Shown here in pieces: positions 28,771 through 58,460 of a stretch of DNA of 64,000 nt. A program made the translations under genes and the position numbers. The notes beneath the pieces are model-generated. The model saw only the letters and a program-made list of their open reading frames with translations. It was not told the DNA's origin and made no database searches. The stretch comes from Scyliorhinus canicula. Lineage: Eukaryota. The first letter of the stretch is position 1. Each line of letters starts with the position of its first letter. The DNA is taken from the NCBI RefSeq assembly GCF_902713615.1, contig NC_052158.1:36819729-36883728 (forward strand). Reading direction: 5' to 3'.

Positions 28771-30741
28771 TCAGTCGGTAGGCCTCTGCAAGTCCAGGCT
28801 TGTTGGTGGGGGCCGAATGTAATGCGACATGAATCCCAGATCCCGGTTGAGTCCGCATTCATGCGTGCGGAACTTAGCTATAAGTTTTTGCTCAGCAATT
28901 TTGCGTTGTCGCGTCTCCTGAAGGCCTCCTTGTAGAATGCTGACCCGGAGATCAGAGGCTGAATGTCCTTGACTGCTGAAGTGTTCCCCAACTGGAAGGG
29001 AACAGTCCTGCCTGTTGATAGTCGCACGATGCCCGTTTATTCGTTGTCGCAGTGTCTGCATGGTCTCGCCAATGTACCACGCTTCGGGACATCCTTTCCT
29101 GCAGCGTATGAGGTAGACTACATTGGTCGAGTCGCACGAGTATGCGCCGCGTACCTGGTGGGTGGTGTTTCCACGTGTAATGGTGGTGTCCATGTCGATG
29201 ATCTGGCATGTCTTGCAGAGATTACCCTGGCAGGGTTTTGTGGTGTTGTGGTTGCTGTTCTGAAGGCTGGGTAATTTGCTGCAAACAATGGTTTGTTTGA
29301 GGTTGCGCGGTTGTTTGAAGGCCAGTAGTGGGGGTGTGGGGATGACCTTGGCAAGATGTCCATCCTCGCTGATGATGTGTTGGAGGCTGCGAAGAAGATG
29401 TCGTAGTTTCTCCGCCCCAGGAAAGTACTGGACGACGAAGGGTACTCTGTCAGTGGTGTCCCGTGTTTGTCTTCTGAGGAGGTCGGTGCGGTTTTTTGCT
29501 GTGGCGCGGTGGAACTGTCGATCAATGAGTCGAGCGCCATATCCCGTTCGTACGAGGGCATCTTTCAGCATCTGTAGGTGTCTGTTGCGCTCCTCCTTGT
29601 CTGAGCAGATCCTGTGTATACGGAGGGCTTGTCCATAGGGGATGGCTTCTTTAATGTGTTTCGGGTGAAAGCTGGAGAAGTGGAGCATCGTGAGATTATC
29701 TGTGGGCTTGCGGTAAAGCGAGGTGCTGAGGTGACCGTCCTTGATGGAGACGAGTGTGTCCAAGAATGGAACTGAATTTGGAGAATAGTCCATGGTGAGT
29801 TTGATGGTGGGATGGAACTTATTGATGTCATCGTGTAGTCGTTTCAGTGATGTCTCGCCGTGGGTCCAAAGGAAAAAAATGTCATCGATGTATCTGGTGT
29901 ATAGCATCGGTTGAAAGTCCTGTGTGGTGAGGAAGTCCTGTTCAAACTTGTGCATGAAGATGTTGGCATATTGAGGTGCAAATTTGGTCCCCATGGCTGT
30001 TCCATGCGTCTGGATGAAGAATTTGTTGTCGAAGGTGAAGACGTTGTGGTCTAGAATGAAACGGATGAGTTGCAGAATTGCGTCTGGAGATTGGCAGTTG
30101 TCGGTGTTGAGGACTGAGGCTGTTGCAGCAATGCCGTCGTCATGGGGGATGCTGGTGTAGAGTGCCGAGACATCCATTGTGACGAGGAATGTTCCTGGTT
30201 CAACTGGTCCATGGGTGCTGAGTTTCTGTAGGAAGTCCGTCGTGTCGCGACAGAAGCTGGGTGTACCTTGTACGATGGGTTTCAAGATGCCCTCGATGTG
30301 GCCAGAGAGGTTCTCACACAGGGTCCCATTGCCTGAAACGATAGGACGGCCTGGTGTGTTGGCCTTGTGTATTTTCGGGAGGCAGTAGAGATCTCCAATG
30401 CGGGGATTACGTGGGATGAGAGCACGTAGGGTGTTCTGAAGGTCTGGATCTAAGGTCTTGATCAGTCTGCTGAGTTGGCGGATGTGTTCCTTGGTTGGAT
30501 CTGCGGGTAACTGCCTGTAGTGTTCCTGGTTGTCGAGTTGTCGGTATACTTCTTTGCAGTAGTCTGTTCTGTTCAGTATGACGGTGGCCCCTCCTTTGTC
30601 TGCTGGTTTGATGACGATGTTGCGGTTGGTCTTGAGAGTGCGGATGGCGTTGCGTTGTGCTTGGGTGACGTTTGAGGCTGCCTTGTGATTGCGAGTGATG
30701 AATCTGGCATTGACATGACTTCTGACGGCTTGAGCATACAT
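28771..30741 (-). CDS. Penelope-like reverse transcriptase-GIY-YIG endonuclease (656 aa, N-terminally truncated)
   Basis: IKPADKGG, YCLPKIHK, GTAMG, RYIDDIF (RT); C..C..C linker; NVVYLIRC..C...WYIGET (GIY-YIG); GLNRD C-terminus. Confidence 0.93.
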   Translation of the reverse strand: MYAQAVRSHVNARFITRNHKAASNVTQAQRNAIRTLKTNRNIVIKPADKGGATVILNRTDYCKEVYRQLDNQEHYRQLPADPTKEHIRQLSRLIKTLDPDLQNTLRALIPRNPRIGDLYCLPKIHKANTPGRPIVSGNGTLCENLSGHIEGILKPIVQGTPSFCRDTTDFLQKLSTHGPVEPGTFLVTMDVSALYTSIPHDDGIAATASVLNTDNCQSPDAILQLIRFILDHNVFTFDNKFFIQTHGTAMGTKFAPQYANIFMHKFEQDFLTTQDFQPMLYTRYIDDIFFLWTHGETSLKRLHDDINKFHPTIKLTMDYSPNSVPFLDTLVSIKDGHLSTSLYRKPTDNLTMLHFSSFHPKHIKEAIPYGQALRIHRICSDKEERNRHLQMLKDALVRTGYGARLIDRQFHRATAKNRTDLLRRQTRDTTDRVPFVVQYFPGAEKLRHLLRSLQHIISEDGHLAKVIPTPPLLAFKQPRNLKQTIVCSKLPSLQNSNHNTTKPCQGNLCKTCQIIDMDTTITRGNTTHQVRGAYSCDSTNVVYLIRCRKGCPEAWYIGETMQTLRQRINGHRATINRQDCSLPVGEHFSSQGHSASDLRVSILQGGLQETRQRKIAEQKLIAKFRTHECGLNRDLGFMSHYIRPPPTSLDLQRPTD

Positions 30742-30815
30742 GTCGAGTCTAGGGCAGCGGCCCTATTTTACCAGTCAGTTTATTTTACCAGTCAGTGTTT
30801 TGTCTGCTCCCTCTT

Positions 30816-30990
30816 GAAATGAAATGAAAATCGCTTATTGTCACGAGTAGGCTTCAATGAAGTTACTGTGAAAAACCCCCAGTCGCCACATTCCGGCGCC
30901 TGTCCGGGGAGGCTGGTACGGGAATTGAACTGTGCTGCTGGCCTGCTTTAAAAACCAGCGATTTAGCCGAGTGAGCTAAACCAGCCCCTG
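30816..30990 (-). mobile_element. Short SINE ((atttc)n-tailed subfamily)
   Basis: rc of gggctggtttagctca..ggttcaattcccgtacc..aagcgattttcatttc. The same family occurs at ~28273, 38695, 41397, 41735, 43100 and 57784. Confidence 0.75.
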
Positions 30991-39610: not shown

Positions 39611-42600
39611 TGACATTTCCCTCACAATAACAGCAACATACCATTTGCCTTCCTTATCACTTGTATGCTTATTTTTTGTGATTCATGTACCAGGACACAG
39701 AATCCCTCTGTATCAAAGAATTATTAAATCTCTCCCATTTAAGAAATATACTGTTTTATCGGTCCTGTCAAATGGTCAAGTTAACAATTTTCCACATTAT
39801 ACCCCATCTGCCAAATGTTTGTCCGTTCACTTAACTTATCTATATCGCTTTGTAGACTAGACTCTTTATGTCCTCTTCACAACTAACATTTCTACATGTC
39901 TTTGTATCACCAGCAAATATTGCAGCCATGCACTCGATCCAATCATGCAAGCCATTGAAATAGATTGTGACATTTTTAAAATATAAATTTAGAGTACCAA
40001 TTATTTTTTTCCAATTAAGGGGCAATTTAGATGGCCAATCCACCTACCCTGCACATCTTTGGGTTGTGGGGGCGAAACCCATGCAAACTGGGATAATGTG
40101 CAAACTCCACCCAGAGCAGGGATCGAACCTGGGACCTCAGCACCGTGAGGCAGCAATGCTAACCACTGCACCAACATGCTGCCCAGTTTGTGACGTTTTG
40201 AGGTCAGCACTGATGCCTGTACCACACCCCTGGTCACATCTTGCCATCCTAAAATTGACCCGTTTATCCTTACACTCTCTTTCCTGTTAGCTGACCTATC
40301 TTTTATCGATGCTAATATATTACTCCCATACCATGGTTTTGCAGACTGACCTTTTATGTGGCACCTTGTGAAATGCCTTTTGGAAATCCAAGTACCACAG
40401 CTACAGGTTCCCTTTTATCCATGATGCTTGTTATTCCCTCAAAGAACTCCAATACTTTTGTCAACTACTATTTCCTTCTCACAAAACCATGTTGGCTCTG
40501 CCTGATTGCATAACGGTTTTCGAAGTGACCTGTTATAACCTGCTCCATTATAGATTTTAGCATTTTCCTCATTTCGAAAGATGGGGGTGGATCTTATTGA
40601 AGCTTACAGGATACAGAGGCCTGGATAGAGTGAACATGGAGGGGAGATTTACACTAGTAGGAAAAACTATAACCGGAGGGCACAGCCTCAGACTAAAGGG
40701 ACAATCCTTTAACACTGAGATGAGGAGGAATTTCTTCAGCCAGAGGTGGTGAATCTGTGGAACCCTTTGCGGCAGAAGGCTGTAGAGGCCAAATCACTGA
40801 GTATCTTTAAGACAGAGATAGATAGGTTATTGATTAATAAGTGGTTATGGGGAGAAGGCAGGAGAATGAAGATGAGGAAAATATCAGCTATGATTGAATG
40901 GTGGAGCAGATTTGATAGGCTAATGGCCCAATCTGCTGCTCTGTCTTATGGATGACAGATGTTTGCCTAACTTTTGGTCACCCCCAACCACAAATAAAGG
41001 AGTTACATTTGCTGTTTCCAATCTGATGGGACCGTTCCAGAATCTAGGAAATTTTGGAAAATTTAAACCAATGCATCAACCATCTCAGCAGCAACTTCAT
41101 TTAAGATTCTACGATGAAGTTCATCAGGACCTGGGGACTTGTCAGCCCCTAGTTTGAATGATTTTCTCAACAATCTTTCCCTCCTGGAACATACAGTGCA
41201 GAAGGAGGCCATTCGGCCCATCGAGTCTGCACCGACCCACCTAAGCCCTCACTTCCACCTGATCCCCGTAACCCAATAACCCCATCTCACCTCACTCTGT
41301 TTCAAGCCATGATGTAAATTTATTTCTGGGAGGTTGTTTGTGTCGTCTTCAGTGAGGACAGACACAAAATATTTGCTTTGTGCATCTCCCATTATCTGGG
41401 GCTAGTTTAGCACAGGGCTAAATCGTTGGCTTTGCAAACAGACCAAGCCAGGCCAGCAGCATGGTTAAAATTCCTGTACCAGCCTCCCCGAACAGGTGCC
41501 GGAATGTGGCGACGAGAGGCTGTTCACAGTAACTCCTTTTGAAGCCTACTTGTGATTTTCATTTCATTTCTTAATTTGCCATTAGCAACACCACAGAGAA
41601 ATCGAGAGATCCACTGCTCAGTTTAGTTTCAATTTTCCTTTATACAGATCTGTAGAAACTCTTGCTGTCTATTTTTATATTCTAGCTAGCTTTCTGTTTT
41701 AGTCTACTCACTGTTACTCTCTGCTTTCTGTCTTGAAACTAACTTGAAAAAAAAAATCGCTTATTGTCACGAGTAGGCTTCAATGAAGTTGCTGTGAAAA
41801 GCCCCTGGTCGCCACATTCCAGCGCCTGTATGGGGCGGTTGGTACGGGAATCGAACTGTGCTGCTGGCCTGCTTGGTCTGCTTTAAAAGACAGCGATTTA
41901 GCCCACTGAGCTAAACCAGCCACTTGCCATCAATTCTGCTATCTGACCCTCGACCCCACATTGTGCACTAATGAATATGGTTGGACAATGTGACGCATTA
42001 TCTGAAGCCTTTTGAAAGTCGGGGCACAATTTAACTAAATGAGGACAAAGTCCCAGAGCGAGTGCGTTTAGCCACTTGTTCCCTGGTGCTACAAACTGCG
42101 ACTCACATTTAATAAGGGACTTTGACGGAGAACGTGCAGCCGAGGCTGCAAAAAACCCCCATTTTGTACACTGAGGAGCTCCGCTCACTGGAAACCCTCA
42201 GTGTAGTAAGAAATCAAGACTCCTATTTTAAATGGCATCGTGATCCCTGAGGCCCCCAAAGCGATCCCTGACCCTCCCTCCACAAGACCCAACACACTTT
42301 CGGAGGTTCCCCGGCACCTGCAACACTCCACTGCACCAGCAGTGCCAGGATACAACCCACCTCTAAAGGCATGCACCTGGAACCTCTGATCCCCTGGGAG
42401 GCCCCCCACGGGTGCAGTTCCGTCTGGTTCCTGTTTCTGGAGAGCAAAGTTTCCAAGGTGAAGGAGACAGATCCCAGGCCTTGGGTAATTCGGGAATCTG
42501 CACAATAAAGTGAAACTAAATATCTTGCTTTAACACGCAGATTTGCGGAAAGGTGATCCCGCCTTCAATCTCGCGAGGTATTGCGAGCCGGGTAGATTGC

Positions 42601-45900: not shown

Positions 45901-48900
45901 GGCGGCCAGGAAATAGGGAAGGTAGTCGATGGAGGGGGGGGGAGACTCGAGGGGATCCGACAGGGCTGAACAAGGTGTTCAGGGACTTCTAGAGTAAGCT
46001 TTACACCTCGGAACCCCCTCCGGGGCCTGAGGGGATGAGGCGCTCTGGTTGAACTGACCTTCCCAAAAGTGGGTAGGGGGTTGGTAGACGGGCTAGGGGC
46101 CCCAATTGGGACCCAAGAAATATTGGGGGGCTTGAGGGCCAGGCAATTGGGTAAAGCCCCGGGGCTGGATGGGTATCTGGTGGAATTTGATAAAACGTTC
46201 TCTGAGATAGTGCGGCCGGTGCTGGTTAGGGTTTTTAATGAGGCAAGAAACAGAGGAGTTCTACCCCCGACGAAGTCACAGGCCACCATCTACCTGATAT
46301 TGAAACGGGACAAAGACCCAGAGGCATGTGGATCTTATAGGCCGATCTCTCTGCTCAATGTAGATGCTAAAATACTGGCCAAGCTCTTGGCTGCTAGGAT
46401 TGAGGACTGTGTGCCGAACGTTATTATGGAAGATCAAACCAGGTTCGTCAAGGGCAGGCAGTTGGTGGCCAACCTAAGAAGGCTGCTGAATGTGATCATG
46501 ATGCCCCCAGAGTGTAGGGAGGCAGAGGTAGTTGTGGCAATTGATGCCGAGAAGGCTTTCAATCGGGTTGAGTGGGACTACTTATGGGATGTGCTGGGAC
46601 GATTTGGGTCCGGGAGGGCCTTATCGACTGGGTCAGACTGTTGTACCAGGCTCCGGAGACTAGTGTAAGGATGAATAGGACGACGTCTGACTATTTTAGA
46701 CTGTACCAAGGGACAAGGCAGGGGTTCCCCCTCTCCCCACTGCTGTTTGCGCCAGCAATACATCCGCTGGCAATTGCTCTTGAGAGCTTCATGGGGCTGG
46801 AAGGGGCTGGTGCGTAGGGGCTGAAACACCATAGTTTCATTGTACACCGATGACCTGCTCTTATACATCACGGATCCAGTGGCTGGGATGTATGAAATCA
46901 TGGGAACGCTGAGGGAATTCAACCGATTTTCAGGGTATAAACTGAACACGGCAAAAAGTTAGTTATTTGTAGTCCAGGCGAAAGAACACGAGGGTCGGCT
47001 GAAGGGGCTGCCGTTTAGGTTAGTAGGGGACAGTTTTAAATACTTGGGCATACAGGTGGCGCGGGACAAGGGCCGGTAAGAACTAGGAGCAGGAGTAGGC
47101 CATCTGGCCCCTCGGGCCTGCTCCGCCATTCAATGAGATCATGGCTGATCTTTTGTGGACTCAGCTTCACTTTCTGGCCCGAACACCACAACCCTTAATC
47201 TCTTTATTCTTCAAAAAACTATCTATCTACTCTTAAAAACATTTAATGAAGGAGCCTCAACTGCTTCACCGGGCAAGGAATTCCATAGATTCACAACACT
47301 TTGGGTGAAGAAATTCCTCCTAAACTCAGTCCTAAATCTACTTCCCCTTACTTTGAGGCTATGCCCCCTAGTTCTGCTTTCACCTGCCAGTGGAAACAAC
47401 CTGCCCGCATCTATCCTATCTATTTCCGTCATAATTTTATCTGTTTCTATAAGATCCCCCCTCATCCTTCTAAATTCCAACGAGTACAGTCCCCAGTCTA
47501 CTCAACCTCTCCTTGTAATCCAACTCCATCAGCTCTGGGATTAACCTAGTGAATCTTCTCTGCACCCTCCAGCGCCAGTACGTCTGTTCTCAGGTAAGGA
47601 GACCAAAACTGAACACAATACTCCAGGTGTGGCCTCACTAACACCTTATACAATTGCAACATAACCTCCCTAGTCTTAAACTCCATCCCTCTAGCAATGA
47701 AGGACAAAATTCCATTTGCCTTCTTAATCACCTGTTGCACTTGTAAACCAACCTTCTGTGACTCATGCACTAGCACATTTTGTGTGGCACATTGTCAAAG
47801 ACTTTCTGGAAACCAGATATACGACATCCATTTGCTCCCCGTTATCTGACGCACTGGTAATGTCCTCACAAAATTCCACGAAATTAGTTAGTTGCACAAG
47901 TTGAAATTTTCTCGGTTGGTGGAGCAAATGAGGGTTGAGTTCTGGAGGTGGGATGCGCTCCCACTGACACTAGCGGGGAGAGTGCAGATGGTTAAAATGA
48001 CGATCGTCCCAAGATTCTTCTTCGTATTCCAGCGTCTCCCCATTTTCATTCCGCGGTCTATTTTCAAGAAGGTCAATGAAATGATTCTGGGATTTGTGTG
48101 GGCGGGAAAGTCCCCGCGGGTGAGGAGATTGATGCTCAAGAGGAACCGGGGAAAGGGGGGCTGACGCTGCCAAACTTTAGTAATTATTACTGGTCGGCCA
48201 ACATAGCTCTGATAAGGAAGTGGATGGTGGGTGCGGGGTCAGTTTGGGGGAGGATGCAGACCGCTTTGTGCAGGGGAACCAGTTTGGCAGCCCTGGTTAC
48301 GGCGTCCATGCCATTCCCGCTGGCAAGATACTCCACCAGCCCTCTTGTGGTGGCGACTTTGCAGATCTGGGGCCAATGGAAAAGGCATGTGGGGGAAGTG
48401 AGAGCATTAGTTTGGTCCCCAATTTGCGGCAATCACCGGTTCGCCCCGGGGAATATGGACGGTGGGTTCCGAACATGGCGGAGGGCTGGGATTGAGAGGA
48501 TGGGGGATCTGTTCTTGGAAGGGAGCTACCCGAGCATGAGGGCGCTAGAGAAGAAATTTGGGCTGGCGAGAGGGAATGTTTTCAGGTACTTGCAGGTGCG
48601 GGACTTTCTACGCAGACCGATCCCATCCTTCCCACGCCTGCCACTGAGGGGGATCCAGGACAGGGTAGTGTCTAATGAATGGGTGGGGGAGGGGAGGGTC
48701 TCAGATATATACAAAGAGCTCATGGGGGCAGAGGAGGTGCAGACCGAGGTGCTGAAGCCAAAGTGGGAAGAGGAGCTCGGAGGTGAGACAGAAGAGGGCT
48801 TATGGGCGGAGTCATTGAGCAGGGTAAACGCAACCGCAACATGCGCTCGGCCCAGCCTGATTCAATTCAAGGTCGTTCACCGGGCCCACATGACAGTGGC

Positions 48901-49512
48901 CCGGACGAGTAAATTCTTTGGATTGGAGGACAGGTGCGCCAGATGTTCGGGAGGACCAGCGAACCATGTGCACATGTTCTGGGCATGTCCAAAACTCAGG
49001 GGGTACTGGCAGGGATTCGCGGAAATTATGTCCCAGGTATTGCAAACCAGGATGGCGATGAGTCCAGAGGTGGCAATTTTTGGGGTTTCGGATGACCCGG
49101 AAGTCCAGGAGGACAGAGAGGCTGACATTTTGGCCTTTGCTTCCCTGGTAGCCCGGCGATGAATTCTGCTGGCATGGAAGGACACAAAGCCCCCGGAGTC
49201 GGAGGCCTGGCTATCGGATATGGCGAGCTTTCTCGGTCTGGAGAAAATGAAGTTCACTCTGAGAGGGTCACTGTCTGTTCGCTCGTAGGTGGCAACCATT
49301 TATCGACCTCTTTGCAGAAAATTAATCGTCAGCAGGTTTGGGGGGGGGGGGGGGCAGTTAGGGCAACGTAGATTCTGGGGGTAGTTAGGCGGGTCCATGT
49401 AGGAGGAGAGCTGGTTTTTGCACTATGTTGATTGCTCTTTGCACTCTGTTTTGTATTGTTGATGTTTACTATGCCAAAAATGCCTCAACAAAGTTGTTTA
49501 TCAAAATAAATC
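42912..49512 (+). mobile_element. Full-length degenerate L1-clade LINE with a 13-bp TSD
   Basis: 5'UTR cttccggtgg; ORF1 (43067 onward, SINE inside); EN TWNVRGLNGPVKR (~44770); RT KAPGLDG..YRPISLLNVDAKIL..DAEKAFNRVEW, YTDDLL; Cys-rich CARCSGGPANHVHMFWAC. TSD gattggccacgct 42899-42911 / gattggccacact 49513-49525. Confidence 0.88.
47078..47885 (-). mobile_element. CR1 3' fragment inserted into the L1 RT
   Basis: VRPHLEYCVQFWSPYL, RRNFFTQSVVNLWNSLP; the L1 reading resumes at ~47888. Confidence 0.88.
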
Positions 49513-52730: not shown

Positions 52731-55367
52731 CCACAAGTAACAAATGTTTGGAAAATGCTAATTTCTTGTAATCGAAACTCAAGCATATCTTTCTGTGAAT
52801 CTGTGCTCCCAACTTGGAATAACACTAGCCCCTGCTGTAGCATTTTAATAAAGGCCTAGTTTTTAACTCCCAAGAGTCTTTGCCTGCCTTCTTATGAGGG
52901 GGAGAGTGAAGTATGCTTAAGTCAAATAGCTTGATACTTTTCCCCACTACAATAGTTATGGTGCACTTTAATTATCCCAATACAGTGTAAGGATTTGGAC
53001 TCTCTTGTACACCCTAGAGTAAGAAAATTCTTGTCAAGAAATATGGACCAATTTAGATTGCAAATTGCCAAGCTTTATTTGGACAATAAAGATTGATACT
53101 GAGCATCTCATTAGTTGAAGCATGGCATGATACATAATTTCAACTGTGTCAGTCTGTCTTTTCTGTGCATCCTGTCACCTCTGGGGTCTTGGTTCCTTGA
53201 ACCTGGTCGCTTGACTCATGACATCCATCTAAATTTTAGCTCAGTGAATTTAATTCAACAAACAATACAAATCCCTTTGGTGCTTTAAGACTTCATCTCC
53301 AACAGATCATTTTCCAACCCACAACTTCCCAGTCCACCAGGCTGGGTCCCATGTTCTGCTCCCTCCTCGGTCACTTCTGTGGCCGGGTCGTGAAGGAGGC
53401 CTGGTCGGGCCTCATCAGGTCGGGCCTGGTCTCCTGGTTGGGGGCCGGGTTGGGTGCTCTGGCGATTGGATTGTGCGGTCTGGGGGCTGGCGTCAGTAGC
53501 TAGGCCGGGTCAGGCCCTCTGACTTCCGGGTCTAATCGAAATCGGGTCTGATCATCAGGAATGCAGCTGGGTCGGATTGAGATGGTCAAAAGGGCCACTC
53601 AATGGGCCTCGGGAATCTTCAAACCTGCAAGGGAAGATAAAAGAGAAATGTTGGTGTTAGTGTTAGAATTAAATTTTTAAAGATTAGTACGGTTATAGGA
53701 GATGTAAAGAGGATCTGTTTGGTGAGCTCGCAGAGAGCCACCACGTTTCTGTGACATCTGGCTTGCTAGGCCATTTCAGAGGTCATTTATGTCTTTTAAG
53801 AGTTATCTGCTTTTAATGCTTTGGTACTTTGATCCTCTCCCCCCCCCCCCCCCCCCCCCCCCCCCAACCCCCCCAGCTCAAGGTTGTGTCTTCCCTCCTA
53901 ATTTCATCCAGATTATCTTTATCCCTTGCTCCAATTTCACACTGATGTACCTGCTCCCTCCCTCTAATTTTGCACTAAAGTACATGCTCCTTCCTTCCAG
54001 CTTCACACTGATACCACTCCCTCCACTTTCATAAGTACACTCCTCCATACTCCCTCCATAGGCAGCAGTGCTAACTACTGCGCCACCATGGCGCCCCTTT
54101 TTTGCCAGTTTCATGCAGGTATTCAGTCCCCTTCCGTCCTCTATTACATTGAGATGTTACTGCTGTCACTGGCTTTTGTTCTTTCCTTCCCATTTCTGTG
54201 ACTTTCTTCCTTGACATACTTTAATTGATTGAATGCCACTGGGTGCAATTCAGGGTTATCACCATACTTATGAAAACGAATGAATTTTCAGATGATGTTG
54301 CTGTGGAGCCATGCGTAGAGGAGAAGTAGCAGGAAGCATCTTTCAGGGACATCAATGGCAAGGGTAAAGGAACAGGAGTATCCATCACGGGCAATTCTCT
54401 GGACTACAGTTAAAGAGTGCACAATGGAACCTGGTCATTACAGCTCCCCACACCCGACACTTCCATTAACCGGTGGAGGATGGGAAGCTGTAGCCACCGA
54501 AGTTGGCCATTTCCCTGAATACAAAATGGAGGAACGCAAAGCATACAGGATAAAATGGACAATGTTTGCAGCCCCAGCAGGCTACACCTAGCAGGTGTGG
54601 ATTCTGCCTGCTAAGAAAGCAGACAGCACCGAAACGAATGTTCCGCATACTAATGAGGCAATAATGGGGATAATTAGTATGTTAATGGAACGATTCCAGA
54701 GACAATGGACACAATTGGGGAAGCAACTGCAACATTGTAAAGGATACCATACACTCAGGCACCAGCAAGGTTCGAAAACAAAGAGCCTGAAGGCCCGCCC
54801 AGTAGGTAAGGAACAGCCTCAGTATTGGGGGGATTCAAACATATCGATTGGGGAGAGACCCAATCGATTCCAAGCAGGAAAGGGAGTCTGCCCAAAGGGG
54901 CGTGGATCCCCTGGGACCTATAAAAGATAGGTCCCACACATGGTTCAGTTTTCTCCTCCACCCCTCCTCTCTCTTTGACTAGCACTCCTCCGTGGACCAG
55001 CACCTCGACCAGCTTTTGCCAAGAAGACCTTGAACAAGAGAGAGGAGAGGGTTCGGACAGCAGCCGCCAGCAAATAAGTGCCTCACAACGATCGCTACTA
55101 GAGATAGACACTCCTGACCCCTTTTAACTTATGCCAACCTGAAGTCTGCAGACCAGAGCAGAGCAAGAGGCCTTGTTTCCTGACCCGGCAGTTCCTTCGA
55201 GATAAGTATTAGTTTATTTAGCGGTCGGAATAAGTTTAATCCTTTTAGCATGTGTATGGGTAGTTATTATAATTGTATTATAATAAACTCAGTTGTTTGG
55301 ACTTACTAATTGGTGTATGGTTTTATTGCCTTGAACTTCACCTTGAACTTGTGGCGGTGTCTTAACG

Positions 55368-57613
55368 GGTGCTATGTCTTTTCGTCCAACGTCATTTCAT
55401 CCAACGACACTTCGTCCACGTCTTTTGGTCCAACGTCTTTTTGTCCGCCCGTCTTTTGGTCCAACGTCACTTCGTCCAATTATCCAATTACAAATTAACT
55501 CCGTATAAAACCATTCAATTGATAAAATGCAAGTACAATACAGCAAGTGAATTTAGTTGCTAAAATGCAAGTAATTGATAAAATGCAAGTAAAATGCAAG
55601 TTGAAAAATGCAGTTTAAAAATCTAAAAATGCAGTTAAAAAATCTAAAAGTTTACTAATAATTTTTTTTGTCTAAGACTTTTTGTAACTTGACTTTTTGT
55701 AACTTGTACCACTCCACTTCACTCCCCACATTAACTTTTTATGCAATAAAGGATTTTTATTACCGGTCCCTTTCCTTTAACGAGCCTCGTTAAAGGATAG
55801 TTATTATCGTTCTCTTTCCTTTAACGAGCCTCGTTAAAGGATAGATATTATCGTTCTCTTTCTTAATTCGCCCATCCCGAAATGGCAAAGTTCATTGTGT
55901 CAACGAAGAGTAAAAGGAAAGTAGCTGATGGAAATAACTATATCTACGATTTTTATTCGAGCAGTCCAAACCTAGGAAAAGAATACTGGAATTGTGAGAA
56001 AAGAAGGCTATGTTCAGTGCGGATTCACACGGTAACGGAAAACAATGAGCCGAAAATTATTTATTTCTCTAATGAGCACCTTCATCCAGCTGATGTTGAT
56101 TCGTTAAATGCTAGAAAAGCAGTTGCAGAAATAAAGCATGAAGCAGTGGAAAACATAGCAGCAAGTTCGCGTAGCATACTAGCGGCCAAGTTTATGCAGC
56201 TATCAGAAAATACCTGCTCTCAACTCCTTAGGTTGCCCGTCGTCTCAAGAAATATTCAAAGGTGCCGACAAAAAAAATTCTGGATTTCCCGCTAATCCAG
56301 CGGCTAGACACGGTTTTGAAATACCTGACAAATATTGTAGACTTCACAATGGCGAACAGTTTCTGAGATACGATTCGGGCGCCGAGGATCAACAGCGCTT
56401 ACTAGTATTCGCATCAGAAAGTGCTCTTCAGAATTTAGCATCATATCGTCATTGGGCATGCGATGGGACATTCAAGATTGTGCCACAACAGTGGTTTCAA
56501 CTGTTCTGCATTCATGTACAAGTTAAAGGAAGCAGTTTTCCACGGGTCTTTGCATTACTGCCGAATAAAAGAAAGCAGACATACGAATTATTCTTTGACC
56601 AATTGAAAATTATGCAACCTAATGCAGATCCGATTGATATCATGGCAGATTTCGAAGTTGCAGTTCACAAGGCAATTAATTCATCATTCCTTAATTCATC
56701 TGTCGTGGCATGTTTGTTTCATTTGAGCCAATCTGTGTTTCGAAAAATTACCGATTTAGGCCTCAAAGAAAAATACAATACAGACTCTGAATTCTGTCTT
56801 AAAATTCGATGTTTTTCAGCATTAGCTTTCCTCCCCGTTGAAGATGTCGAAGAGGCTTATGAAGATTTGATAGACGATGAAGAAATACCTGCTGAATTCA
56901 TCGTTTACTTCGACTTGACTTACATAGGCATTGTGAGAGGACGTGGTGCCAGACGGAGGAGTGAAACACCTACATTCCCGACAGCTGTATGGAATGTTAA
57001 TCAGCGTGTTCTACAAGATCTACCGAGAACAAATAATGCTGCTGAGGGGTTTCATTCTGCCATAAAGCGTTCGGCGGGTGGAGCTCATTTGAATATCTGG
57101 AGGTTAATCAAAACTCTGAAGGAAGAGGAAGGGTTCATAATAGACAAAAAGGCTCAAATTCTTCGGGGAGATCAGTCGACTTCATGTACGCGATATAAGA
57201 AAATAACTGAACGCCTCAAAAAATTGGTCGTTGAATATGATTCTACAACAAAAATTGATTTCTTGAGGAATGTTGCTTACAATTTACATCAATTTTAAGT
57301 AATTTTGGGAATTTGAAGTAATTAGTAAACTTTTAGATTTTTTTAACTGCATTTTTAGATTTTTAAACTGCATTTTTCAACTTTCATTTTACTTGCATTT
57401 TATCAATTACTTGCATTTTAGCAACTAAATTCACTTGCTGTATTGTACTTGCATTTTATCAATTAAATGGTTTTATACGGAGTTAATTTGTAATTGGATA
57501 ATTGGACGAAGTGACGTTGGACCAAAAGACGGGCGGACAAAAAGACGTTGGACCAAAAGACGTGGACGAAGTGTCGTTGGACGAAGTGACGTCGGACGAA
57601 AAGACGCGACACG
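55368..57613 (+). mobile_element. Mutator-superfamily (Phantom-like, FLYWCH+MULE) DNA transposon
   Basis: ~290-bp TIRs (55368-55659 / 57321-57613) with about 10 mismatches; 9-bp TSD gtcttaacg (55359-55367 / 57614-57622); transposase ORF between them. Confidence 0.92.
55882..57298 (+). pseudogene. FLYWCH-MULE transposase with one +1 frameshift in an A8 run (56270-56277); ~471 aa if repaired
   Basis: YIY..KEYWNC..C.VRIHT..H.H (FLYWCH). The shifted frame is open through HWACDGTFK, IMADFEVAV, CLFHLSQ, PRTNNAAEGFH (MULE DDE). Confidence 0.9.
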
Positions 57614-57783
57614 GTCTTAACGATACCTGGCGACTCCAGAGCTCAGTAAAGAAACAGAGCCAAATTGAGTGTTAAGCACACTCACCCAGAACGACCAACA
57701 AAGCGGTTGGAGGGGGAGGGTGTGGCTGACGATGACACAGGCTTCAGATAGGCTGAAAAAGGAGGAGGAAAGGTTGTGTGACT

Positions 57784-58460
57784 GTCTCACACGGGGAGCT
57801 GGTTTAGCTCATTGGGCTAAATAGCTGGCTTGCAAAGCAGGCCAGCAGCACGGTTCGATTCCCGTACCAGCCTCCCCGGACAGGCTCCGGAATGTGGCAA
57901 CTAGGGGCTTTTCACAGTAACTTCATTGAAGCCTACTCGTGACAATAAGCGATTTTCATTTTTCATTTCATTTCACTGGCATATTCGATGTGATTTGTGA
58001 CATTGATTTTGACAGTATGTAGTGCCAGGAAACTGCAAGGATTCAAACATGGATTTGCAGGAAAAGCAGGCAAGAATTTAGAAGATGGCAATATGTTCAA
58101 GGCGTTTGCAGGCCAATGGAAGGTTGGAGCTGGGGGTGTAGTTTGCGTGGATACAGAGATAAAGATTTTTATTTGAGGAGCGAGGTGATTACGTCATTTG
58201 GAAATGAGAGGGGAATATTACCTAAAGAAAGCTGACTGTATGGAGTTTGCACATTCTCCCCATGTCTGCGTGGGTTTCCTCCCCGAGTCCAAAGATGTGC
58301 AGGTCAGGTGGATTGGCCAGTGTAAATTCCCCATGAGTGTCCAAAATGTTAGGTGGGGTTATGAGAATAGGTGGTGGCGCAGGGCCTAGGTAGTGTACTC
58401 TTTCAGAGGGTCAGTGCAGACTTGATGGGCCGAATGGCCTCCTTCTGCATTGTAGAAATT
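57784..58460 (+). mobile_element. Two SINEs (~57784-57975 short subfamily; ~58225-58460 headless HE1-like)
   Basis: Family motifs as above. Confidence 0.7.

What the first reader, a model, noticed from the sequence alone, without database searches (positions are those of the whole stretch)
55368..57613. Nearly intact Phantom-like MULE transposon in a shark genome: candidate recent invader
Seen: exact 9-bp TSD, ~290-bp TIRs about 96-97% identical, and a FLYWCH+MULE transposase broken only by one extra A in an A8 run. The element is AT-rich and intronless, unlike the decayed shark repeats around it. Known: FLYWCH-MULE (Phantom) elements are described mainly from invertebrates, protists and insect viruses, and young autonomous MULEs are unusual in vertebrates. 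Inference: a recent, possibly still active family, possibly horizontally acquired. The frameshift could be an assembly homopolymer error.
Basis: partly seen in the sequence, partly recalled or inferred. Interest (0 to 1): 0.72.

Follow-up and report, generated by a model that had tools for sequence, protein, structure and literature searches.

The report
Invertebrate-type Mutator transposon in a shark
A 2.2-kb cut-and-paste jumping gene of the Mutator type, complete except for one frameshift, sits in a shark chromosome; its nearest relatives are in octopus, prawn and open-ocean DNA, so it most likely entered the shark lineage by horizontal transfer, in a group (vertebrates) where such elements were doubted to exist.

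Summary
Window 55368-57613 is a 2,246-bp DNA transposon with an exact 9-bp target-site duplication (GTCTTAACG) and about 293-bp terminal inverted repeats. It carries a FLYWCH + MULE transposase gene that matches its 470-474-aa relatives end to end. The gene is broken only by one extra A in the A8 run at 56270-56277.

The host is a shark: a neighbouring retroelement ORF is 91% identical to a Scyliorhinus torazame protein. The transposase has no vertebrate relative among 109 database hits. Its closest kin are a Tara Oceans metagenome contig (88% nucleotide identity), a decayed Octopus vulgaris copy (84%) and a Palaemon carinicauda copy (80%). The prawn copy shares the termini, the 15-nt subterminal repeats and a 9-bp duplication.

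Synonymous divergence is 0.36 from octopus and 0.75 from prawn. The element is not CpG-depleted (observed/expected 1.12, against 0.42 in the rest of the window). Horizontal transfer and a fairly recent insertion are therefore well supported.

Current activity is not shown. This copy is frameshifted, and the read check (A7 versus A8, empty site) could not be run.

This scan had already found the same family on other DNA of this genome and reached the same reading. It is a new vertebrate member of a known kind (Phantom/Tm1-like MULE).

The parts
55359..55367 (.). Left copy of the 9-bp target-site duplication GTCTTAACG
   Evidence: Read directly; identical to 57614-57622.
55368..57613 (+). Whole transposon copy, 2,246 bp, starting GGTG and ending CACG
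   Evidence: Bounded by the TSD and TIRs. The Palaemon copy has the same termini.
55368..55661 (+). Left terminal inverted repeat, about 293 nt: an asymmetric 8-nt tip, then the 15-nt repeat array, then an AT-rich inner part
55376..55479 (+). Subterminal array of 6.9 tandem copies of the 15-nt unit GTCTTTTCGTCCAAC; inferred transposase binding sites
   Evidence: TRF. An 18-nt core occurs 3 times per end against 0.07 expected. The prawn has the same unit 5.9 times. The outer 115 nt are 86% identical to prawn and 80% to octopus, while the inner TIR cannot be aligned.
55747..55878 (+). Three 44-nt tandem repeats, each holding the palindrome CCTTTAACGAG-C-CTCGTTAAAGG, just upstream of the start codon; possible promoter or regulatory region
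   Evidence: As single-stranded DNA it folds at -26.8 kcal/mol, z = -7.3. Partly conserved in the octopus copy.
55882..56295 (+). Transposase piece A (137 codons to the premature stop). The FLYWCH zinc finger is at residues 18-68 (55933-56085), with the W-x-C...C...H-x-H pattern intact
   Evidence: 80% identical to Octopus bimaculoides P0062.
56270..56277 (+). A8 homopolymer holding the +1 frameshift
   Evidence: Prawn and octopus each have one base fewer here. P0062 reads through in frame. Not checked in reads.
56279..57298 (+). Transposase piece B (339 codons plus stop). The MULE catalytic domain is at 56453-56731. Catalytic D62 is at 56462-56464, D124 at 56648-56650 and E256 at 57044-57046. 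The CxxH motif is C145/H148 and the conserved tryptophan is W238
   Evidence: AlphaFold2 pLDDT is 94.4. The best fold match is the IS256-family ISCth4 transposase.
57319..57613 (-). Right terminal inverted repeat, about 294 nt
57502..57606 (-). Right subterminal array of 7.0 copies of the 15-nt unit
57614..57622 (.). Right copy of the 9-bp target-site duplication GTCTTAACG

Best explanation
This is one copy of a multi-copy family of cut-and-paste DNA transposons of the Mutator superfamily, of the FLYWCH-MULE type (Phantom/Tm1-like), inserted in a shark chromosome.

How it works (inferred from the family). A single intronless gene encodes a transposase of about 471 aa. Its N-terminal FLYWCH zinc finger most likely recognises the seven 15-nt repeats (GTCTTTTCGTCCAAC) in the outer roughly 105 nt of each inverted repeat. 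Its C-terminal DDE domain (D62, D124, E256 of piece B, plus CxxH and a conserved W) cuts the element out by double-strand breaks and joins the ends to a staggered cut in the target. That staggered cut leaves the 9-bp duplication.

What is shown for this copy. The anatomy is complete, and one extra A in an A8 run splits the gene. As assembled, the copy cannot make transposase, but it keeps both ends and could be moved in trans.

Origin. The family did not descend vertically in vertebrates. It entered the shark lineage by horizontal transfer from a lineage circulating in marine animals. The sampled kin are an open-ocean metagenome contig, octopuses and palaemonid prawns. This copy inserted fairly recently, on the order of millions of years ago rather than hundreds of millions.
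For: Anatomy:
- TSD, TIRs and repeat arrays.
- FLYWCH and MULE domains above Pfam cutoffs.
- D62, D124, E126, C145, H148, W238 and N253 are invariant, and E256 is conserved in at least 90%, across 43 family members.
- The AlphaFold2 model is confident (pLDDT 94.4). Its best PDB matches are the IS256-family ISCth4 transposase (E 3e-5), then Hermes and integrase cores.

Host:
- A Penelope-like RT ORF at 28774-30741 is 91% identical to a Scyliorhinus torazame protein and 85% to a Heptranchias perlo protein.

Foreign origin:
- Of 105 hits to piece B and 4 hits to piece A, none that carries a name is from a vertebrate. Most carry no name. Shark proteomes are in the same database.
- In the protein tree the shark sequence sits in a clade of 5 (SH-aLRT 99) with Palaemon and Octopus. 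That clade is nested in an 18-member clade (99) whose named members are palaemonid prawns. The tunicate elements lie elsewhere.
- Nucleotide identity is 87.8% to Tara contig L203, 83.9% to the Octopus vulgaris copy and 80.3% to the Palaemon copy. The outer TIRs are also conserved.
- Nei-Gojobori dS is 0.36 to octopus and 0.75 to prawn, with dN/dS 0.16-0.38.
- The prawn copy has its own 9-bp TSD (CTTCCAAAC), the same GGTG...CACG termini and the same 15-nt unit.

Recency:
- The arms differ at 5 substitutions and 1 indel in 285 nt.
- CpG observed/expected is 1.12 in the element against 0.42 (0.35-0.49 per 8 kb) in the rest of the window.

Not a one-sample artefact:
- 20 sequencing runs from 8 studies hold 57-62% of the element's 31-mers.

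Mechanism from the literature:
- Muta1 transposase binds its ends and makes double-strand breaks with hairpins on the flanking DNA. It needs the DDE triad and a W residue, and it depends on a terminal motif and subterminal repeats (PMC5499845).
- Tm1 elements have asymmetric terminal motifs, tandem 13-15-bp repeats in the TIRs, 9-bp TSDs and a FLYWCH + MULE transposase (PMC3169594).
Against: - No direct donor has been found: the nearest sampled relative is still 12% diverged.
- Host-gene dS was not computed here, so the dS argument relies on the general knowledge that vertebrate-mollusc and vertebrate-arthropod synonymous sites are saturated.
- Absence from other vertebrates rests on annotated protein sets, which often omit transposons.
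- The organisms behind the sequencing runs are coded, so I cannot say whether the second organism is another shark.
- Binding of the FLYWCH finger to the 15-nt repeats is inferred, not shown.
- The age estimate assumes that the arms were identical at insertion, and it needs a shark mutation rate that I did not measure.
Confidence: 0.85

Rival explanations
1. The frameshift is a homopolymer error of the assembly. The real copy has one A fewer, encodes an intact transposase of about 471 aa and may be autonomous.
For: The only lesion is a length change in an 8-base homopolymer. Everything else in the gene is intact and all conserved residues are present. Earlier first-stage notes of this scan report apparently intact copies elsewhere in the genome (not checked here).
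Against: The copy has had time to mutate: the arms differ by 5 substitutions plus another A-run indel. Homopolymer slippage is also a common real mutation. No read evidence either way.
Confidence: 0.2
2. The element is foreign DNA (prey, parasite or laboratory contaminant) wrongly assembled into a shark scaffold.
For: Its closest relatives are in octopus and prawn, which sharks eat. Its GC and CpG content differ from the flanks.
Against: An exact 9-bp TSD sits at precise TIR ends inside continuous shark sequence, with shark-type repeats on both sides. The copy is 12-20% diverged from every invertebrate copy. Runs from 8 studies hold near-identical sequence. Earlier notes report many copies on other pieces of this genome.
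Confidence: 0.02
3. The family was inherited vertically from the common ancestor of bilaterians and lost in most lineages.
For: FLYWCH-MULE elements are widespread in animals, tunicates included.
Against: dS of 0.36-0.75 and 80-88% nucleotide identity, non-coding outer TIRs included, between phyla separated for more than 500 million years. The shark sequence is nested among prawn and octopus elements, not next to the tunicate ones. The element is not CpG-depleted in a CpG-depleted genome.
Confidence: 0.02
4. It is a domesticated, transposase-derived host gene rather than a mobile element.
For: FLYWCH-domain host genes derived from transposases exist in animals (PMC10027918, title and abstract only).
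Against: It has both TIRs, a TSD, a frameshift and multi-copy status, and relatives with the same ends at unrelated sites in a prawn.
Confidence: 0.01

Closest known systems
Phantom family of Mutator-like elements (group 20 of Dupeyron et al. 2019, PMC6446971)
   Same: One ORF with an N-terminal FLYWCH finger and a MULE DDE domain, 8-10-bp TSD, TIRs within the reported 18-613-bp range, animal hosts including Crustacea and Tunicata, and suspected horizontal transfer.
   Different: The host is a vertebrate. That paper found only limited evidence for MULEs in chordates and asks whether they are really absent from vertebrates. I did not place the shark protein in a tree with the canonical Phantom sequences.
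Tm1 of root-knot nematodes (PMC3169594)
   Same: Composite TIRs with asymmetric outermost motifs followed by tandem 13-15-bp repeats, a 9-bp TSD without an evident target consensus, and a FLYWCH + MULE transposase of about 470-500 aa.
   Different: Different repeat unit and termini. There is no histone-hairpin variant here. Sequence relatedness to Tm1-A was not tested.
Muta1 of Aedes aegypti (PMC5499845, PMC5225508)
   Same: An animal MULE of the Phantom clade. It is the mechanistic model: binding to the ends, dependence on subterminal repeats and a terminal motif, a DDE triad plus a conserved W, and a 9-bp TSD.
   Different: Muta1 has been shown to be active in yeast and in vitro. Nothing has been assayed for the shark element, and this copy is frameshifted.
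The same element family in Palaemon carinicauda (GCA_036898095.2, CM072482.1, about 3.61 Mb; locus L001) and Octopus vulgaris (OX597835.1; locus L002)
   Same: GGTG...CACG termini, the 15-nt unit, a 9-bp TSD (prawn), and colinear coding sequence at 80% (prawn) and 84% (octopus) nucleotide identity.
   Different: The inner TIR and 5' leader cannot be aligned. The prawn TIR is about 105 nt against about 293 nt. Both invertebrate copies are more damaged: the prawn copy has a stop and a 2-nt deletion, and the octopus copy has many stops and indels.
IS256-family transposase ISCth4 (PDB 6xgx, 6xg8)
   Same: Best structural match of the predicted catalytic domain. This fits the established kinship between the Mutator superfamily and IS256.
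   Different: It is prokaryotic, shares 12-13% sequence identity and has no FLYWCH finger.

Membership tests
Mutator / MULE superfamily | Transposase with the MULE domain (PF10551) above the curated cutoff | tested here: met
   44 bits against a cutoff of 27.6, E 3.2e-11.
Mutator / MULE superfamily | Conserved D, D, E triad with a CxxH motif and a conserved W | tested here: met
   D62, D124, C145, H148 and W238 are invariant, and E256 is conserved in at least 90%, in a 43-sequence alignment. The spacings are 62 and 132 residues.
Mutator / MULE superfamily | RNase H-like DDE fold related to IS256 transposases | tested here: met
   Model pLDDT 94.4. The top PDB matches are the ISCth4 transposase, then Hermes and integrase cores.
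Mutator / MULE superfamily | Target-site duplication of 8-11 bp, typically 9 bp | tested here: met
   Exact 9-bp GTCTTAACG. The prawn relative also has 9 bp.
Mutator / MULE superfamily | Terminal inverted repeats, often long, with subterminal repeats | tested here: met
   About 293-nt TIRs with seven 15-nt units per end.
Mutator / MULE superfamily | Excision by double-strand breaks with a hairpin on the flanking DNA | not testable with these tools
   Known for Muta1 (PMC5499845); needs biochemistry.
Phantom family | N-terminal FLYWCH zinc finger fused to the MULE domain | tested here: met
   PF04500, 35.3 bits against a cutoff of 23.6. The finger residues are present.
Phantom family | Falls in one clade with the canonical Phantom or Muta sequences | tested here: inconclusive
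   My tree holds animal FLYWCH-MULE proteins, including Ciona, but no canonical Phantom, Muta1 or outgroup sequence.
Tm1-like composite-TIR elements | Asymmetric terminal motifs followed by tandem 13-15-bp repeats in the TIR, with a 9-bp TSD | tested here: met
   compared with the description in PMC3169594.
Horizontally transferred transposon | Element tree at odds with the host tree, and patchy distribution | tested here: met
   Shark nested with prawn and octopus at support 99, tunicates elsewhere, and no vertebrate among the named hits.
Horizontally transferred transposon | Element dS far below host-gene dS for the same species pair | tested here: inconclusive
   Element dS is 0.36 (octopus) and 0.75 (prawn). 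Host-gene dS was not computed and is assumed saturated.
Autonomous, currently active element | Uninterrupted transposase ORF in this copy | tested here: not met
   A +1 frameshift in the A8 run as assembled. Not verified in reads.
Autonomous, currently active element | Insertion polymorphism or new insertions | not testable with these tools

The most novel reading that the evidence does not exclude
The family is still transposing in this shark: intact copies exist and insertions are polymorphic. That would make it the first demonstrably active Mutator-type transposon in a vertebrate. It would have been acquired from cephalopod- or crustacean-associated DNA, possibly along a predator-prey or parasite route. 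It could also serve as a natural vertebrate-adapted MULE for use as a genetic tool.
Probability: 0.25. Interest if true: 0.8.

Novelty: new member of a known kind. Interest (0 to 1): 0.6.

Why it matters
A 2019 survey of Mutator elements across eukaryotes found only limited evidence for them in chordates. [quoted passage not shown] A survey of 975 horizontal transposon transfers among 307 vertebrate genomes does not mention Mutator or sharks in its main text (PMC7070016).

A structurally complete, young FLYWCH-MULE in a shark answers that question positively for at least one vertebrate lineage. Its kin in octopus, prawn and open-ocean DNA document a transfer between phyla in the sea.

It also gives a concrete system for testing whether a Mutator transposase can work in a vertebrate germline that methylates CpG.

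Tried and rejected
- **Read check.** A7 versus A8, depth and empty-site joints are therefore unknown. The local BLAST of the flanks left them out.
- **Read-through protein.** The transposase was never searched as one read-through protein; the two pieces were searched apart, as required.
- **Exact look-up.** The 137-aa product of piece A is not on record.
- **Viral contigs.** There is no relative, by single protein or by profile. A 14-nt TIR pattern gave only scattered matches, one or two per contig. No viral vector was found.
- **JGI metagenome contigs.** The single-protein scan found nothing. With the profile the best match is only 51% identical.
- **Solved structures by sequence.** No match.
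- **Rfam on the whole window.** No match.
- **Cluster look-up of unnamed relatives.** No host names came back, apart from one member filed under an Aquifex MAG.
- **Big representative search.** Not used. Its library carries no names, so it could not say whether relatives are from vertebrates.
- **Other copies in the window.** None of the element. The flank sequence within about 180 nt of the insertion has no other copy in the window.
Full report
**1. The observation**

The 9-mer GTCTTAACG stands at 55359-55367 and again at 57614-57622, directly against the two ends of the element.

The ends are inverted repeats. An ungapped core of 267 nt is 98% complementary. A gapped alignment carries the repeat to about 293 nt, with 9 mismatches and one A-run indel, which is 96.6%.

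Five of the nine mismatches lie in the outermost 8 nt (GGTGCTAT against CGTGTCGC). The prawn and octopus relatives show the same left/right asymmetry. I therefore take it as a built-in feature, as in Tm1 elements (PMC3169594), and not as decay. Without those 8 nt the arms differ by 5 substitutions and 1 indel in 285 nt (98.2%).

Each end carries about seven tandem copies of the 15-nt unit GTCTTTTCGTCCAAC. An 18-nt core of that unit occurs six times in the window, all in the two ends, against 0.07 expected.

**2. The gene**

- Frame A (55882-56295, 137 codons) holds a FLYWCH zinc finger.
- Frame B is open from 56183 and ends at 57298. It holds a MULE transposase domain.
- Both domains score above Pfam's curated cutoffs.

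The two pieces align end to end with relatives of 470-474 aa, without further stops or gaps, so the gene is intronless.

In a three-way DNA alignment the prawn and the octopus copies each have exactly one base fewer inside the A8 run at 56270-56277. The Octopus bimaculoides protein P0062 reads RQKNSGFPANP across the site.

I searched the two pieces apart and did not search or build a joined protein.

In a 43-member alignment D62, D124, E126, C145, H148, W238 and N253 of piece B are invariant, and E256 is conserved in at least 90% of members. This gives the D-D-E triad, the CxxH motif and the tryptophan that matter in Muta1 (PMC5499845).

The AlphaFold2 model of piece B is confident (pLDDT 94.4, pTM 0.91). 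Its best matches among solved structures are the IS256-family ISCth4 transposase (E 3e-5), then Hermes and the retroviral integrase cores. That is the expected kinship for a Mutator transposase.

**3. The host**

A 656-aa reverse-transcriptase ORF at 28774-30741 (minus strand) is 91% identical to a Scyliorhinus torazame protein. It is 85% identical to one of Heptranchias perlo and 82% to one of Mustelus asterias.

The window is CpG-depleted (observed/expected 0.42), as vertebrate genomes are. The host is a shark.

The element is embedded in it:
- A short interspersed repeat with at least nine other copies in the window lies 180 nt to its right.

**4. Relatives**

- The word search with piece B returned 105 proteins. 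None that carries a name is from a vertebrate, although shark proteomes are in the same database.
- The best hit is a Palaemon carinicauda protein at 77% identity. Octopus vulgaris and O. bimaculoides fragments follow at 68-70%, and then there is a gap down to 52%.
- Piece A found only four fragments: one from O. vulgaris and three from marine metagenomes.

I fetched the DNA of these relatives.

The prawn locus L001 holds a 2.15-kb element with these features:
- its own 9-bp TSD (CTTCCAAAC);
- the same GGTG...CACG termini;
- the same 15-nt unit, 5.9 copies;
- 80.3% identity over the coding sequence;
- 86% identity over the outer 115 nt of the TIR.

The Octopus vulgaris locus L002 holds a decayed copy that is 83.9% identical over the coding sequence.

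A Tara Oceans contig, L203 (ERZ908115), is an internally deleted copy. It is the closest DNA relative, at 87.8% over 687 nt.

The trees agree:
- In the protein tree the shark sits in a clade of five with Palaemon and Octopus (support 99). That clade is nested in an 18-member clade (support 99) whose named members are palaemonid prawns. The tunicate elements are elsewhere.
- A DNA tree splits the close group into (shark, octopus, L203) and (prawn, L205, L204), each at 100/99 support.

Nei-Gojobori estimates are dS 0.36 and dN/dS 0.38 against the octopus pseudogene copy. Against the prawn copy they are dS 0.75 and dN/dS 0.16-0.18.

**5. Reading of the origin**

Vertebrates, molluscs and arthropods have been apart for more than 500 million years, and their neutral sites are saturated (general knowledge, not computed here). 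Four findings cannot be reconciled with vertical descent:
- synonymous distances of 0.36-0.75;
- conserved non-coding ends;
- a tree that nests a shark element among prawn and octopus elements;
- no vertebrate among the named relatives.

They fit horizontal transfer. Purifying selection along most of the path (dN/dS well below 1) fits lineages that stayed functional while moving between hosts.

Neither prawn nor octopus is the donor, because the nearest sampled sequence is still 12% away.

I found no relative in viral contigs, so no vector can be named.

**6. Age and activity**

The arm-to-arm divergence is 1.75%. At a rate of 0.5-2.5e-9 per site per year this gives roughly 3 to 18 million years. 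That is my inference. No shark rate was measured here, and two of the five changes are CpG transitions, which run faster.

The element's CpG observed/expected is 1.12 (coding part 0.97), against 0.42 around it. A long residence in a methylated germline would have eroded this, so the copy is young in transposon terms.

Twenty runs from eight studies, under two coded organism labels, hold 57-62% of its 31-mers. This corresponds to about 1.6% difference if spread evenly. It is what one expects if contigs carry the family's majority sequence.

None of this shows present activity. As assembled, this copy cannot make transposase. The read check for A7 against A8, and for an empty allele, could not be run.

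**7. Mechanism**

Shown here:
- the complete cis and trans anatomy;
- conservation of the catalytic residues;
- the fold;
- the fact that only the outer, repeat-bearing part of the TIR is conserved between phyla, while the inner AT-rich part and the 5' leader are not.

Inferred:
- The FLYWCH finger binds the 15-nt repeats.
- The DDE domain excises the element by double-strand breaks with hairpins on the flanking DNA and inserts it into a 9-bp staggered cut. This is as demonstrated for Muta1, where the subterminal repeats and the terminal motif affect transposition (PMC5499845).

Three 44-nt repeats, each with an 11-nt-arm palindrome, lie just upstream of the start codon. They fold far better than shuffled sequence (z = -7.3). 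They may be regulatory, and I leave that open.

**8. Comparison with what is known**

The element meets every sequence-level criterion of the Mutator superfamily and the FLYWCH + MULE architecture of Phantom. Its composite TIR matches the Tm1 description (PMC3169594).

I did not place it in a tree with the canonical Phantom sequences, so formal clade membership is open.

What is unusual is the host. Dupeyron et al. found only limited evidence for MULEs in chordates. They could not confirm the Repbase vertebrate entries and asked whether MULEs are really absent from vertebrates (PMC6446971). A survey of arthropod MULEs mentions Palaemon carinicauda among species with long TIRs, but it treats arthropods only (PMC13359780). 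My paper searches found no report of this element in sharks.

**9. Earlier notes of this scan**

The same family was already noted on other pieces of this genome. Three of those notes were followed up, with the same conclusion of prawn and octopus kin and horizontal transfer. I re-derived the prawn and octopus kinship independently. The statements that other copies are intact or transcribed were not tested here.

**10. Verdict**

This is a real, young, structurally complete but frameshifted copy of a horizontally acquired FLYWCH-MULE family in a shark. It is a new member of a known kind in an unexpected host. Whether the family is active remains open.

Noticed in passing
window 28771-30741 (minus strand): An uninterrupted 656-aa reverse-transcriptase ORF, 91% identical to a Scyliorhinus torazame protein. 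More distant relatives carry a GIY-YIG domain (PF01541), so it looks like a Penelope-like retroelement, possibly young.
   Followed up: partly
window 55747-55878: Three 44-nt tandem repeats inside the transposon's 5' leader, each with the palindrome CCTTTAACGAG-C-CTCGTTAAAGG. They fold strongly as single-stranded DNA (z = -7.3) and are partly conserved in the octopus copy. Function unknown.
   Followed up: partly
window 57795-57970: A short interspersed repeat with at least nine other copies in the window (74-91% identical), for example at 30815-30988 and 41745-41920.
   Followed up: no
protein P0238 (RUM30838.1), same cluster as P0008: A member of this animal transposase family (51% identical to the shark piece B) is filed in NCBI as a protein of an Aquifex sp. 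metagenome-assembled genome. It is probably animal DNA binned into a bacterial MAG.
   Followed up: no
loci L203, L204, L205 (Tara Oceans metagenome contigs): Open-ocean metagenomes hold fragments of the same element family. L203 is closest to the shark and octopus copies (88% and 87%). L205 is 91% identical to the prawn copy. The hosts are unknown.
   Followed up: partly
Nothing is known about them, and no search tool was given them afterwards.
   Followed up: no
window 48098-49162 (plus strand): A 354-aa ORF with no Pfam match.
   Followed up: no
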